A DNA stretch of 63,188 bases, the filler included, from Octopus bimaculoides (taxonomy: Eukaryota): NCBI RefSeq assembly GCF_001194135.2. It is 8 parts of 7 records of this genome, joined end to end, with 100 filler letters (N's around TTAATTAATTAA, not from the genome) between each part and the next. Parts side by side here need not be neighbours in the genome. Positions count along the whole stretch, not along the records: positions 57,199 to 60,886 come from NC_068991.1; 7 more parts are not named here. One strand, given 5' to 3'. Under the pieces are notes generated by a model. It saw only the letters and a program-made list of their open reading frames with translations. It was not told the DNA's origin and made no database searches. The number at the start of each line of letters is the position of its first letter. Position 1 is the stretch's first letter. Positions 57,099-60,886 of this stretch are shown piece after piece. The position numbers were made by a program, and so were the translations under genes.

Positions 57099-57199
57099 NN
57101 NNNNNNNNNNNNNNNNNNNNNNNNNNNNNNNNNNNNNNNNNNTTAATTAATTAANNNNNNNNNNNNNNNNNNNNNNNNNNNNNNNNNNNNNNNNNNNNG

Positions 57200-57736
57200 A
57201 CACAGACGTCGCGGCTCACCGTAGACCACGTTTTACCAGGTTTTTCGAGCCAACAACGAGCAGACATTGCGAATCAAATGATAGCGAAAGATACACAGAC
57301 GTCGCGGCTCACCGTAGACCACGCTTTACCACGTTTTTCGCGCCAACAAGAAGCAGACTTACCGATTCACCAAACTCAACCGATAACGAAACGGATACAG
57401 ACGTCTACGCTCACCTCAGACCAGGCTTCACCAGCCAGTTTCGGGGAACACAACCCGAACTGTATCAATATTTATGTTCCACTGCAGGTCAATGCCCATC
57501 AACCACATCAAATCCCCACAAATCAAACCCCAACGAGAAACAAAACGTACACCACTACTTTCGGTCAGCCACATATCAGATTCCACAATCAACCTCCGCG
57601 CAATTTATATGAGGATCCCCCAGATATTAGTGAGCGCTTCAGACGAAACCATCCCAGTTTTTACCAAGAAAATCCACCAACTAGAAACCAGAGAGATGAG
57701 AGAGAATCATGTATAAACCCTGTTTGGCGGTATTAG
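57200..57736 (+). CDS. Putative terminal coding exon, unknown Pro/Thr/Gln-rich protein with internal repeats (paralog 1); 5' end hidden in the gap
   Basis: Frame open from the gap edge (TQTSRLTVDHVLP...) to TAG at 57734-57736. 93- and 102-nt in-frame repeats. About 54% identity (43/79, hand count) to paralog 2. Confidence 0.5.
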   Translation, partial: TQTSRLTVDHVLPGFSSQQRADIANQMIAKDTQTSRLTVDHALPRFSRQQEADLPIHQTQPITKRIQTSTLTSDQASPASFGEHNPNCINIYVPLQVNAHQPHQIPTNQTPTRNKTYTTTFGQPHIRFHNQPPRNLYEDPPDISERFRRNHPSFYQENPPTRNQRDERESCINPVWRY

Positions 57737-57933
57737 CTCTTTTGTACGAATTTAATCCACCGGAAAAGTGTGATAAGTGTCGTCTTAGTCCGCCTTAGAC
57801 AAGATTACAGCCGTAACATCCCAATCTACGACTTACCAGATACCAACAGAGATCAAAATCTTTCATTAACTGATTCACGTGATATATATACATACATATA
57901 TGTGTGGGTGTACGCGCGTACGCTTAATTATGT

Positions 57934-58023
<90 letters not shown>

Positions 58024-58338
58024 GTGTATTTCGATATTTCACTGTGTATGATGTATCTATAGTTCAGTATGCGGGACCTGTTAGATTGGTGTTCTCCCAG
58101 TGCATCGATCTGGACTACCTACAATCTGCTCAGCCTAAATAAATATATAATAGATATTAAAAACTCACCCCACTCGCTTTCGTTCGACATTGCCAAATTT
58201 GTCATGGATAATCAGTGTATATAAATTTTGTTACTGTGCAAAAATAGTGTATATTTCAGTGTGTATATATCGTTATGTTTCATTTTGTATTCGGTGTGTA
58301 GTTCTCTCAGTGCCAGGGTCGATCTTGGAATGTTTCAG

Positions 58339-58934
58339 GCAAAACAAAGTCAGAAGGAACTAACACTGACCAAGAGGAACACGTCGATAACTATCCCAGT
58401 CACCTCAAATCACCAATGCCTCACACGGTCGAAGCTTCAACGGTCACTCCAGACCAACATAGACCAGATTCCAAGAGCCACTTGAAACCAACACAATCAC
58501 CAAAACTCAATACTAACCAAGCCCCAGCAGTTTCTTCGGGCCTACAGAGAGTTGACTTTCCGAATCGTAACAATAAATCGGTGACTGCAATGGCCCAGAA
58601 TTCTCAACCCAGTACAAACCAAACATTACCAATCACTTTCGAAGAACACGGCCCAAAATGTATCAGTATTTCTCTTCCACTGAATGTCAATTTCCAACAA
58701 CCACCTAAAACTACTACACATCAGGCACCAACTAAGAACAACAAAGGTTACACCACTGCTATCGGTCCGCCGTATATCACGTTTTTCAATCCACGTCAGC
58801 CCACTTTGTATGAACGTCCCCACCCAAATATCTGCGAGCGCTTTTGTCGAAACCATCCTAGTTTCGATGCAGTTCTGTCAACGCAACACCAGAGTGATAA
58901 CACTAAACATATGAATCGAAAGTGCCAGTATTAG
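58339..58934 (+). CDS. Putative terminal coding exon, unknown protein (paralog 2)
   Basis: Frame open 58302-58934. Acceptor tttcag|GC at 58338/58339 (alternative ttctctcag at 58310). Shares FxEHxPxCIxIxxPLxVN, YTTxxGxPxIxFxN and ERFxRNHPSF with paralog 1, and the same Y-stop. Confidence 0.5.
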
Positions 58935-59077
58935 CTCATGCCAACTTAATTCACCATAGACTAACGATCAACATTCGTCTAGATCCGCCACAGACCAGAT
59001 TAAAGCTTCAGTCCATTATGTATCATACGCCAACAGAAACCAAAACCAAGAGCATTTATACATACATACATACATAC

Positions 59078-59167
<90 letters not shown>

Positions 59168-59974
59168 GACTACATTCTACTAGAACCAGAGCTAACAATT
59201 CGTCTTGATCTACTAAATGAGAAAATGAATACAGCTCAACACATGTAACTCAAATGAACAATTACGCCTTATGCTGAAGATGCTTGGAGATGTATTATAT
59301 ACTTCAATAAGTAGGTAGCTAGTTACGAATTATTCAATAGTTAGCGCATTCAATAATGTTCGTAAAGCAAAAACTGTCTTCGTCAACGTTAAGCTTTTCA
59401 AATACATGATATACTGTACCAGAATAAAATACTCATGGTGAACCAACTTCCAACTCATTGGTCATTACATTGTTCCATGTCCTATCCACGAATCCTGCAG
59501 TTGAATGTCTCCTTAATGTAAACTTAGCGTGACGTACGGGCGCTATATGCAGAATTGCTTTCCTTTTGAAAAGCTGTGTTGTTTTCATTAAGGTCGCACG
59601 CTGTTTACATGAAGAGGTGCATGGTTGAGCTTTACAGAAACCTTACTTAATTTATATCAATAGATGTGTTATTGATTTGTAAACATGTACCACAGCCCTT
59701 CACTAGGGGGCCCATTATAGGCTTTTATTACAATCCAATTAACTTATAATTTTACTGGATGTTCGTTTAACATATATGCAAAGTGTCAAGATTGGTTCAC
59801 TGGTGAAGGCATCAAGATGGTAACAGACAAACAGATAGACAGATCAAACTGTCAAAAATTGCCATTTATGTAAGAGATATATATTTGACTGCGGCCATGC
59901 TGGAGCACCGCCTTTTGTCGAGCAAATCGATCCCAGGCCTAGTAAGCCTAGTACTTATTCTATCGGTTCTTTTG

Positions 59975-60296
59975 CCGTGAGGAGGGATCCGGTTTCCAAC
60001 AAAGATACAAGGCTCCATCTTTGGGATGTAGTTATAACAAAAAAAAATTCACATTTGGAACTTGAGAAAAGTCTTGCATATTTTTACTGTTCCACTCACA
60101 GATTGTACTTGTGCGAATTAACCGGTCAATTTCTCTTTCTGAAAACCCCAGTTTATCCAGATTCTCCTTCAAGCATTTACTTACAAAACAGTCCTCCAAT
60201 TATTATTGGTATGAATATCAATTAATAGTCTGGATATAGAAGGTGGAGGTTTCGAAGCCGATGCTCAAAGAGATCCTCTTTTGCTTTGATTTTTCA
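59975..60296 (-). mobile_element. R4/Dong-like RLE C-terminus and 3' UTR (same family as 12056)
   Basis: LRNLHLLYPDY..IFIPIIIG, VSKCLKENLDKLGFSEREIDRLIR, QSVSGTVKICKTFLKFQM* (stop at 60049-60051). Confidence 0.8.
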
Positions 60297-60837
60297 AGGA
60301 GATATGTATGTATGTATGTATGTATGCGTGTAAGTATGTATGCAACTGTGTTCCTGTTTATGTATATAAATATAAATCTCTGCGTCAAACAGCGCTACAT
60401 AGTTTTATTTACGCTTCGAATACGATGTAAGACAGTATGTAGGTAATGTGTCGGATTCTGATGTCTCATATAATATCTAGTATTATATAATAACTGAAAC
60501 ATCATAGTATATTTTATGATCTGAAGATAAAAAAAAGAGACGTTTAACGTCTAGATCGGTAGAATTTCGATAAAAAATAAACCGATAAAATTACTATTTC
60601 GCTACCAGCTAGCGTATATCTTAAAAAATGAGTAAACAAACGTTTCTCAGCATGGCAGCAATCAGAAGATGTATGTATGTAGGTATGCATGTATATATGA
60701 GTATATGTGTGCGTACGTGTTTGTATGTATATATGTTAGTTTTTATGTATGCATTTATATACATATATATATGGAAGTATGTGTGTGTGTGTGTGCATGT
60801 ATTTATATACATCCATGTATGTATATACATACATATT

Positions 60838-60886
<49 letters not shown>

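What the first reader, a model, noticed from the sequence alone, without database searches (positions are those of the whole stretch)
57200..59050. Tandem pair of divergent, frame-preserving paralogous exons encoding an unrecognised protein
Seen: two open frames (at least 178 and about 198 codons) about 1.2 kb apart. They share 43/79 identical residues by hand count. The two indels in the aligned core are both 3 nt, the tail differs by 2 codons, both end in Y-TAG-CTC, and homology continues about 130 nt into the 3' flank. Copy 2 has a phase-1 acceptor. AATAAA occurs at 58138 (between the copies) and at 59423. Many substitutions are non-synonymous, yet no stop or frameshift has arisen, unlike every transposon ORF in this window. 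I recognise no domain or transposon motif. Inference: alternative last exons of one gene, or remnants of a fast-evolving lineage-specific tandem family. There is little room between them for a full second gene.
Basis: partly seen in the sequence, partly recalled or inferred. Interest (0 to 1): 0.7.

Follow-up and report, generated by a model that had tools for sequence, protein, structure and literature searches.

The report
Tandem duplicated open exon, unknown protein
Two diverged copies of a roughly 1.2-kb unit lie head to tail; each carries an intact open reading frame, about 130 bases of downstream sequence and a simple repeat, and they most likely represent a duplicated last coding exon of an uncharacterised, probably disordered animal protein, but no tool here could rule out a repeat-element origin.

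Summary
Two + strand frames, 178 codons (cut by the piece's edge) and 210 codons, lie 1.2 kb apart. They share 42/77 residues in a C-terminal core (BLASTP E = 6e-23) and both end in Y-TAG-CTC. Homology runs about 130 nt past the stop into an (ATAC)n(AT)n microsatellite present after both copies.

Evidence for coding is moderate:
- Such long open frames are rare in shuffles (p = 0.005 and below 0.0005).
- All five alignment gaps inside the ORF are multiples of 3. None of the four in the 3' flank is.
- No stop has arisen where about 5 were expected.
- T is enriched at third codon positions.

Constraint on the amino acids is weak (dN/dS about 0.5 to 0.6, differences spread almost evenly over codon positions).

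The protein is 46-48% P/Q/T/N/S, has internal units of about 31-34 residues, and is predicted disordered (pLDDT 45). It matched nothing in Pfam, the PDB or two very large protein libraries. Those collections do not seem to sample the source genome, so neither orphan status nor copy number could be established.

Alternative last exons is the most economical reading (about 0.4) but is untested. An ORF from a repeat element remains a serious rival (about 0.3). Interest is modest.

The parts
57200..57736 (+). Copy 1: open frame of 178 codons plus TAG stop (57734-57736). Its 5' end is cut by the edge of the piece.
57200..57433 (+). In-frame internal tandem units in copy 1 (periods 93 and 102 nt, 31 and 34 codons). 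Units 1 and 2 are 88% identical. The third unit runs into the conserved core.
   Evidence: (D5, D7)
57434..57661 (+). Conserved C-terminal core of copy 1 (SFGEHNPNC...ERFRRNHPSF).
57737..57873 (+). 3' flank of copy 1, homologous to that of copy 2 (65% identity; gaps of 1, 4, 8 and 13 nt). Presumed start of the 3' UTR.
57880..58030 (.). Microsatellite A, (AC)n/(ATAC)n/(AT)n, at the right-hand end of unit 1.
58031..58338 (+). AT- and T-rich spacer (GC about 0.33) with no counterpart after copy 2. It ends in the acceptor-like tttcag (58333-58338). There is an in-frame TAG at 58299-58301.
58339..58934 (+). Copy 2: candidate terminal exon, 198 codons from the phase-1 acceptor (frame open from 58302, 210 codons), plus TAG stop (58932-58934).
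58632..58865 (+). Conserved C-terminal core of copy 2 (TFEEHGPKC...ERFCRNHPSF).
58935..59057 (+). 3' flank of copy 2, homologous to that of copy 1.
59058..59160 (.). Microsatellite B, (ATAC)n(AT)n, at the right-hand end of unit 2. Homology between the units stops here.

Best explanation
Shown: a unit made of a coding segment, about 130 nt of downstream sequence and an (ATAC)n(AT)n microsatellite was duplicated head to tail. The copies start about 1.2 kb apart. They have since diverged to about 66-74% DNA identity while both reading frames stayed open.

Inferred:
- The segment is the 3'-terminal coding exon, with the start of its 3' UTR, of a taxonomically restricted animal gene. The animal is probably an octopus, but that attribution rests on my memory only.
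- Unequal exchange between flanking microsatellites is a plausible way for the duplication to have arisen.
- The product is a P/T/Q/N/S-rich, internally repetitive and largely disordered protein. It ends in a somewhat better conserved block of about 77 residues: F-x-EH-x-P-x-C-I ... Y-T-T ... L-Y-E ... E-R-F-x-R-N-H-P-S-F.
- Selection has kept both frames open but has constrained the residues only weakly.
- The simplest use of two such copies 1.2 kb apart is as alternative last exons. One upstream donor would splice either to copy 1 or to the phase-1 acceptor at 58339, each followed by its own polyadenylation site. This would give two isoforms with homologous but different C-terminal tails.
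For: Tandem paralogy:
- BLASTP E = 3e-28, and E = 6e-23 for the core.
- Self-blastn aligns 57417-58007 with 58615-59163 at 66% over 598 columns. This covers core, tail, 3' flank and microsatellite.

Coding:
- Open frames this long are rare in shuffles (0.005 and 0/2000).
- In a codon-blind MAFFT alignment the ORF gaps are 6, 3, 3, 3 and 3 nt, against 1, 4, 8 and 13 nt in the flank.
- Redistributing the observed substitutions gives a mean of 5.4 stops, with P(no stop) = 0.003.
- Base composition differs by codon position, with T enriched at position 3 (p = 0.0013 for copy 2, 0.01-0.04 for the cores). Two non-ORF controls are not significant.
- The core is less diverged than the flank (JC distance 0.33 against 0.47).

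Exon start:
- GC rises from 0.33 to 0.48 and AT skew flips from -0.30 to +0.45 exactly at tttcag|G, 58339.
- That site ranks 6th of 191 AG sites on a crude score.

Not a recognisable mobile element:
- No Pfam family.
- No target-site duplication around unit 2.
- No tRNA-like head.

Precedent: 3' CDS exon duplications that give homologous C-termini through alternative poly(A) use are a described class, with LAMP2, TPM1 and TPM3 as examples (PMC8373072).
Against: - Constraint on the amino acids is weak. dN/dS is 0.50 in the core and 0.58 overall, and differences by codon position are 17/19/23.
- Excess identity over the redistribution null reaches only p = 0.07, and excess BLOSUM score only p = 0.06.
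- In copy 1's internal repeat, all 7 changed codons are non-synonymous.
- The A+C-rich, strand-asymmetric composition extends through the 3' flank. It lowers stop density in all frames. Copy 1 also has frames of 137 and 109 open codons in the other two phases.
- AATAAA occurs at chance frequency, including once inside the copy 2 ORF.
- The acceptor of copy 1 and any upstream exon lie outside the piece.
- The structure model is of low confidence (pLDDT 45).
- No homologue, transcript or orthologue could be examined.
Confidence: 0.4

Rival explanations
1. The unit belongs to a dispersed repeat family. Examples would be two 5'-truncated copies of related non-LTR retrotransposon subfamilies (end of an ORF, then a 3' UTR, then a simple-repeat tail), or an unclassified octopus repeat with its own ORF. 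The two copies would have landed at, or been amplified around, an ACAY-type microsatellite. The frames would be intact because divergence happened in active master copies, not in place.
For: - The layout 'ORF end, about 130 nt, (ATAC)n(AT)n' in both copies resembles the 3' end of a LINE.
- Some APE-type non-LTR elements insert specifically into ACAY, AC or TAA microsatellites (PMC3812793).
- About 66% of the O. vulgaris genome is annotated as repeats, with LINEs (12.9% of the genome) and SINEs (11.6%) the most abundant TE orders (PMC13282606). The prior for repeat origin is therefore high.
- The A-rich sense-strand composition spans the ORF and the flank.
- Weak constraint on the amino acids.
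Against: - No reverse transcriptase, endonuclease, zinc-knuckle or any other Pfam match in either ORF or in the other frames.
- The sequence is low-complexity, with in-frame units of 31-34 residues. To my own knowledge this is unlike LINE ORF2 C-termini.
- No target-site duplication around unit 2.
- No third copy on either strand in the remaining 1.7 kb.
- No relative among 1.84 billion representative proteins.
- Same orientation and near-identical extent at the 3' end fit a local duplication more simply.
Confidence: 0.3
2. The sequence is non-coding, or no longer coding. A duplicated A+C-rich, stop-poor segment would carry long open frames largely because of its composition and its 3n-periodic internal repeats. 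Alternatively, one or both copies are pseudo-exons that have not yet been hit by a disabling mutation.
For: - Differences are spread almost evenly over codon positions, and dN/dS is 0.5-0.9 depending on the segment.
- The identity and BLOSUM tests are not significant at 0.05 in the core.
- All three + frames are unusually open in copy 1.
- The model predicts disorder.
- No homologues were found.
- The finding was picked from a 60-kb scan, so its p-values need correction for how it was selected.
Against: - Five of five ORF gaps are multiples of 3, against none of four in the flank (Fisher's exact test gives about 0.008 by my own arithmetic).
- P(no stop) = 0.003 given the observed substitutions.
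- Codon-position compositional periodicity is present in the ORFs and absent from the controls.
- Flank divergence is JC 0.47. Using the calibration quoted in PMC13282606 (JC 0.09 = 25 My, 0.2 = 56 My, measured against a consensus), this implies tens of millions of years. That is long enough to break an unconstrained frame.
Confidence: 0.2
3. Two separate small genes in tandem, each with its own promoter. Copy 2 would be translated from the ATG at 58416 to give a 172-residue product.
For: - An ATG-to-stop ORF of 172 aa exists at 58416-58934, and one of 152 aa at 57278-57736.
- A TATA-like tatataaa lies at about 58220.
Against: - Two upstream ATGs, at 58275 and 58330, open short out-of-frame ORFs before 58416 (read).
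- The frame is open 38 codons upstream of the ATG, up to the acceptor-like site and the composition switch.
- Copy 1's frame runs open past its first ATG to the edge of the piece.
- Neither ATG-to-stop product is on record as a called gene.
Confidence: 0.1

Closest known systems
Alternative 3'-terminal exons derived from tandem exon duplication (for example the 3' exon sets of LAMP2, TPM1 and TPM3; PMC8373072)
   Same: Adjacent, same-strand, homologous coding segments of similar length. The frame is preserved, and each has its own stop codon and downstream sequence. The expected outcome is isoforms with homologous but distinct C-termini, produced through alternative polyadenylation.
   Different: Use of either exon is not shown here. 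The known examples encode structured, well conserved segments under clear purifying selection. This pair is low-complexity, predicted disordered and evolving close to neutrally at the residue level.
Taxonomically restricted ('orphan') fast-evolving genes in local tandem families
   Same: No detectable homologue or domain, biased composition, predicted disorder, high dN/dS and a local tandem copy.
   Different: Orphan status is not demonstrated. The searchable libraries seem not to contain the source genome's ORFs. Only the last 178-210 codons are visible.
3' ends of non-LTR retrotransposons with simple-repeat tails or microsatellite targets (Waldo/ACAY, Mino/AC, Dong/TAA; PMC3812793)
   Same: ORF end, short untranslated stretch and an (ACAT)n-type simple repeat, in the same order in both copies. 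The sense strand is A-rich.
   Different: No reverse-transcriptase or endonuclease signature, no target-site duplication, and a protein that is low-complexity with 31-34-residue repeats. Dispersed copy number is unknown.

Membership tests
Tandem-duplicated alternative 3'-terminal exons | Two homologous coding segments adjacent on the same strand | tested here: met
   BLASTP E = 3e-28. Self-blastn gives 66% identity over 598 columns with a start-to-start spacing of about 1200 nt.
Tandem-duplicated alternative 3'-terminal exons | Reading frame preserved in both copies, each ending in its own stop codon | tested here: met
   178 and 210 open codons, both ending in TAT TAG. All ORF gaps are multiples of 3. 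P(no stop) = 0.003.
Tandem-duplicated alternative 3'-terminal exons | Each copy has a 3' splice acceptor in the same intron phase | tested here: inconclusive
   Copy 2 has tttcag|G at 58339, phase 1. It ranks 6th of 191 AG sites and sits at a sharp composition switch. The matching position in copy 1, about 57141, lies outside the piece.
Tandem-duplicated alternative 3'-terminal exons | Each copy has its own polyadenylation site | tested here: inconclusive
   AATAAA lies 402 nt and 489 nt after the two stops. The motif occurs at chance frequency, and once inside the copy 2 ORF.
Tandem-duplicated alternative 3'-terminal exons | Transcripts joining a shared upstream exon to one copy or the other | not testable with these tools
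   No transcript data are available, and no collection here holds the source genome.
Non-LTR retrotransposon (5'-truncated copies) | ORF with reverse-transcriptase or endonuclease homology | tested here: not met
   No Pfam match at E up to 10 in either ORF or in the alternative frames. No hits in the protein libraries. Caveat: only the last 178-210 codons are visible.
Non-LTR retrotransposon (5'-truncated copies) | 3' untranslated region ending in a simple-repeat or poly(A) tail | tested here: met
   In both copies about 130 nt of homologous flank is followed by (ATAC)n(AT)n. A local duplication that included a microsatellite predicts the same layout.
Non-LTR retrotransposon (5'-truncated copies) | Target-site duplication flanking the insertion | tested here: not met
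   The only shared word of 8 nt or more between 58030-58640 and 59150-59230 is TATATATC, which is simple-repeat sequence.
Non-LTR retrotransposon (5'-truncated copies) | Many dispersed copies in the genome | not testable with these tools
   There is no third copy in the piece. The source genome is not in any searchable collection.
Any curated protein family (Pfam) or solved structure | Significant profile match | tested here: not met
   Pfam gave 0 families. A PDB profile search gave 0 matches at E up to 10. The AlphaFold2 model has pLDDT 45.3 and pTM 0.15, too poor for a fold search.

The most novel reading that the evidence does not exclude
A cephalopod-restricted gene whose last exon was duplicated tens of millions of years ago. 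Both copies would have been kept open while their residues, apart from a short C-terminal motif set (F-x-EH-x-P-x-C, YTT, LYE, ERF-x-RNHPSF), drift or diversify. The gene would then produce two interchangeable disordered C-terminal tails with a conserved short-linear-motif core, a new protein family with no relative outside the lineage.
Probability: 0.25. Interest if true: 0.45.

Novelty: new member of a known kind. Interest (0 to 1): 0.3.

Why it matters
If both copies are spliced as alternative last exons, this would be an invertebrate example of a C-terminal isoform switch created by exon duplication, in a protein family not present in any searched library. It would also show a reading frame maintained for a long time with very little constraint on the residues. 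That pattern suggests the function lies in length, composition or short motifs rather than in a fold. If the unit is instead a dispersed repeat, it is an unclassified ORF-bearing element worth adding to cephalopod repeat libraries. Either way this is a single-locus observation of modest general consequence until transcript and copy-number data are seen.

Tried and rejected
- Pfam on both ORFs and on seven other frames or ORFs of the piece: nothing usable.
- PDB profile search: nothing.
- Word-indexed search of 5.8 billion proteins with each copy: nothing.
- Full HMMER profile search of 1.84 billion representatives: one hit at E = 9e-4. It is an unrelated perfect-repeat protein (VPLTVEWH)n and was rejected as compositional.
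- Degenerate-pattern scans with tblastn confirmation of metagenome, viral and prokaryote genome contigs: nothing.
- Exact look-up of the two ATG-to-stop products: not on record.
- Positive controls for the presence of the source genome. The queries were a peptide from the open frame of the abundant octopus SINE, recalled from memory and partly confirmed by the fragment at 59888-59975, and an exact SINE 21-mer. The peptide was searched in the protein database and the 21-mer in the metagenome contigs and the paper texts. Nothing was found. The negative homology searches therefore say nothing about genomic copy number.
- Rfam: only sub-threshold 'miRNA' and snoRNA hits on microsatellites, rejected as artefacts. 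No tRNA.
- AlphaFold2 on the two-sequence alignment: pLDDT 45. A fold search was not run because the result would be meaningless.
- AATAAA as evidence for poly(A) sites: rejected, since the count equals chance.
- The conserved GTATTAGCTC at the ORF end as a 5' splice donor: considered and rejected. It is a weak match (no G at +5), and a run of 10 identical bases is expected by chance at this level of identity.
- Search for a target-site duplication around unit 2 and for a third copy: negative.

Full report
**What is there**

The piece is 57199-60886. It holds two long open frames on the + strand.
- Copy 1 is open from the first full codon of the piece (57200) to 57733, with TAG at 57734-57736. 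That is 178 codons, and the 5' end is cut by the edge of the piece.
- Copy 2 is open over 58302-58931, with TAG at 58932-58934, which is 210 codons.
- The two products align at 59/139 identities, E = 3e-28.
- A C-terminal core, SFGEHNPNC...ERFRRNHPSF against TFEEHGPKC...ERFCRNHPSF, has 42/77 identities, E = 6e-23.
- Both frames end in TAT TAG CTC (family D13).

At DNA level, self-blastn aligns 57417-58007 with 58615-59163 at 66% identity over 598 columns. The aligned stretch covers the core, the tail, about 130 nt beyond the stop, and an (ATAC)n(AT)n microsatellite that follows both copies (57880-58030 and 59058-59160). No homology continues beyond the microsatellites. There is no third copy in the remaining 1.7 kb on either strand.

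The repeated unit is therefore 'coding segment + about 130 nt + microsatellite', and the copies start about 1200 nt apart.

**Internal structure**

- Copy 1 begins with in-frame tandem units of 93 and 102 nt (31 and 34 codons). The first two are 88% identical (D5 and D7).
- The third unit runs into the conserved core. TQTSRLTVDHVLPGFSSQQRAD can be compared with IQTSTLTSDQASPASFGEHNPN.
- The upstream part of copy 2 matches that of copy 1 weakly and in several registers (E about 8e-4). The same unit structure is therefore present there in a more diverged form.
- Both products are 46-48% P+Q+T+N+S and have no hydrophobic segment.
- AlphaFold2 on the two-sequence alignment gives pLDDT 45.3 and pTM 0.15. 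It shows a single short helix over ICERFCRN. The model fits a disordered protein, and it was too poor to justify a fold search.

**Is it coding?**

Evidence for:
1. Open frames this long occur in 0.5% (copy 1) and 0 of 2000 (copy 2) dinucleotide-preserving shuffles.
2. In a MAFFT DNA alignment that knows nothing about codons, the gap runs inside the ORF are 6, 3, 3, 3 and 3 nt. Those in the 3' flank are 1, 4, 8 and 13 nt. Five of five against none of four gives about 0.008 by Fisher's exact test (my arithmetic).
3. Redistributing the observed substitutions at random over copy 1 creates a mean of 5.4 stops, and no stop in only 0.3% of trials.
4. Base composition differs by codon position, with T enriched at position 3. 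The p-value is 0.0013 for copy 2 and 0.04 and 0.01 for the two core-plus-tail segments. Two non-ORF controls from the same piece show nothing.
5. The core is less diverged (JC 0.33) than the 3' flank (JC 0.47).

Evidence against, or weakening:
- Differences are spread almost evenly over codon positions (17/19/23 in the core).
- Nei-Gojobori dN/dS is 0.50 in the core, 0.57 upstream and 0.92 in the tail.
- Amino-acid identity and BLOSUM score exceed the redistribution null only at p = 0.07 and 0.06 in the core.
- All seven changed codons between copy 1's first two internal units are non-synonymous.
- The A+C-rich composition lowers stop density generally. Copy 1 also has 137 and 109 open codons in the other two + frames.
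- The locus was selected from a 60-kb scan, so its p-values should be discounted.

My reading is that the frame has been under selection, and that the residues outside a few motif positions have been nearly free to change.

**Age**

A repeat-annotation paper on Octopus vulgaris equates JC distances to consensus of 0.09 and 0.2 with 25 and 56 million years (PMC13282606). Applied to the pairwise flank distance of 0.47, this puts the duplication at tens of millions of years. The estimate is rough and assumes the source is an octopus. That is long enough for an unconstrained 200-codon frame to have been broken. It also predicts that both copies exist in related species.

**Exon boundaries**

- At 58339 GC rises from 0.33 to 0.48, AT skew flips from -0.30 to +0.45, and GC skew flips from +0.30 to -0.31.
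- On a crude score (pyrimidine tract plus CAG|G), this site ranks 6th of 191 AG sites on the + strand of the piece. That is respectable but not unique.
- A phase-0 alternative at 58311 ranks 33rd.
- The equivalent position for copy 1, about 57141, is outside the piece.
- AATAAA is present 402 and 489 nt after the two stops. It also occurs inside the copy 2 ORF at 58572, and the total count equals the shuffle expectation. It is not evidence.

**Identity of the protein**

Nothing was found:
- Pfam.
- PDB profile search.
- Each copy against 5.8 billion proteins.
- A two-sequence profile against 1.84 billion representatives with full HMMER. The only hit was an unrelated perfect-repeat protein.
- Pattern scans with tblastn confirmation of metagenome, viral and prokaryote genome contigs.
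- Exact look-ups of the ATG-to-stop products.

These negatives have limited weight. I ran a positive control because the piece contains, at 59888-59975 on the minus strand, what I recognise from memory as the 3' half of the very abundant octopus SINE. A peptide from the SINE's open frame found no candidate in the protein collection. An exact 21-mer of the SINE is absent from the metagenome contigs and from the searchable paper texts.

The collections available here therefore do not seem to sample raw ORFs or DNA of the source genome. Copy number, orphan status and transcription could not be tested.

**Explanations**

1. Best supported, about 0.4. This is a duplicated 3'-terminal coding exon, with the start of its 3' UTR and a microsatellite, of a taxonomically restricted gene. 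Unequal exchange between microsatellites is a plausible origin. Both copies have been kept open and are most simply used as alternative last exons. Such duplications of 3' CDS exons, giving homologous C-termini through alternative poly(A) use, are a described class (PMC8373072).

2. Main rival, about 0.3. The unit is a dispersed repeat with an ORF.
   - The layout 'ORF end, short untranslated stretch, ACAT-type simple repeat' resembles the 3' end of a non-LTR retrotransposon.
   - Some such elements target ACAY, AC or TAA microsatellites (PMC3812793).
   - Two thirds of an octopus genome is repeats.
   - Against it: no reverse-transcriptase or endonuclease signature, no target-site duplication, and a low-complexity repetitive protein.

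3. Non-coding or decaying sequence, about 0.2. This is supported by the weak constraint on the amino acids and opposed by the pattern of gaps, stops and codon periodicity.

4. Two separate small genes, about 0.1. This is opposed by upstream out-of-frame ATGs, and by frames that stay open upstream of the candidate start codons.

**Verdict**

The kind of event, tandem exon or gene-end duplication in a fast-evolving uncharacterised gene, is known. Interest is modest until a genome-wide copy count and transcript junctions are seen.

Noticed in passing
window 59888-59975, minus strand: A fragment of about 90 nt (cggcaaaagaaccgatagaataagtactaggctt...aaggcggtgctccagcatggccgcag). I recognise it, from memory only, as the 3' half of the highly abundant octopus SINE. 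It has no tRNA-like head and no Rfam match. If the recognition is right, it supports an octopus origin for the piece.
   Followed up: partly
window 57880-58030, 59058-59160, 60303-60342, 60669-60886: Dense (AC)n, (ATAC)n, (AT)n and (TATG)n microsatellites. The last one runs into the end of the piece. All Rfam 'miRNA', snoRNA and scaRNA hits at relaxed threshold fall on these repeats and are far below the gathering scores, so they are artefacts.
   Followed up: yes
window 57200-57433: In-frame tandem units of 93 and 102 nt inside copy 1. Units 1 and 2 differ at 9 nt, and all 7 affected codons change the amino acid. This hints at relaxed or diversifying evolution of the repeat part.
   Followed up: partly
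window 57488: A strong acceptor-like site, ttccactgcag|GTCAAT, lies inside copy 1's core (rank 3 of 191). It is not conserved in copy 2, which reads ttccactgaat|gtcaat, so it is probably fortuitous.
   Followed up: partly
window 60032-60199, minus strand: A 55-aa ORF (EDCFVSKCLKENLDKLGFSEREIDRLIRTST...) next to the SINE fragment, with only sub-threshold Pfam matches (E about 0.1). It may be a decayed fragment of another element.
   Followed up: partly
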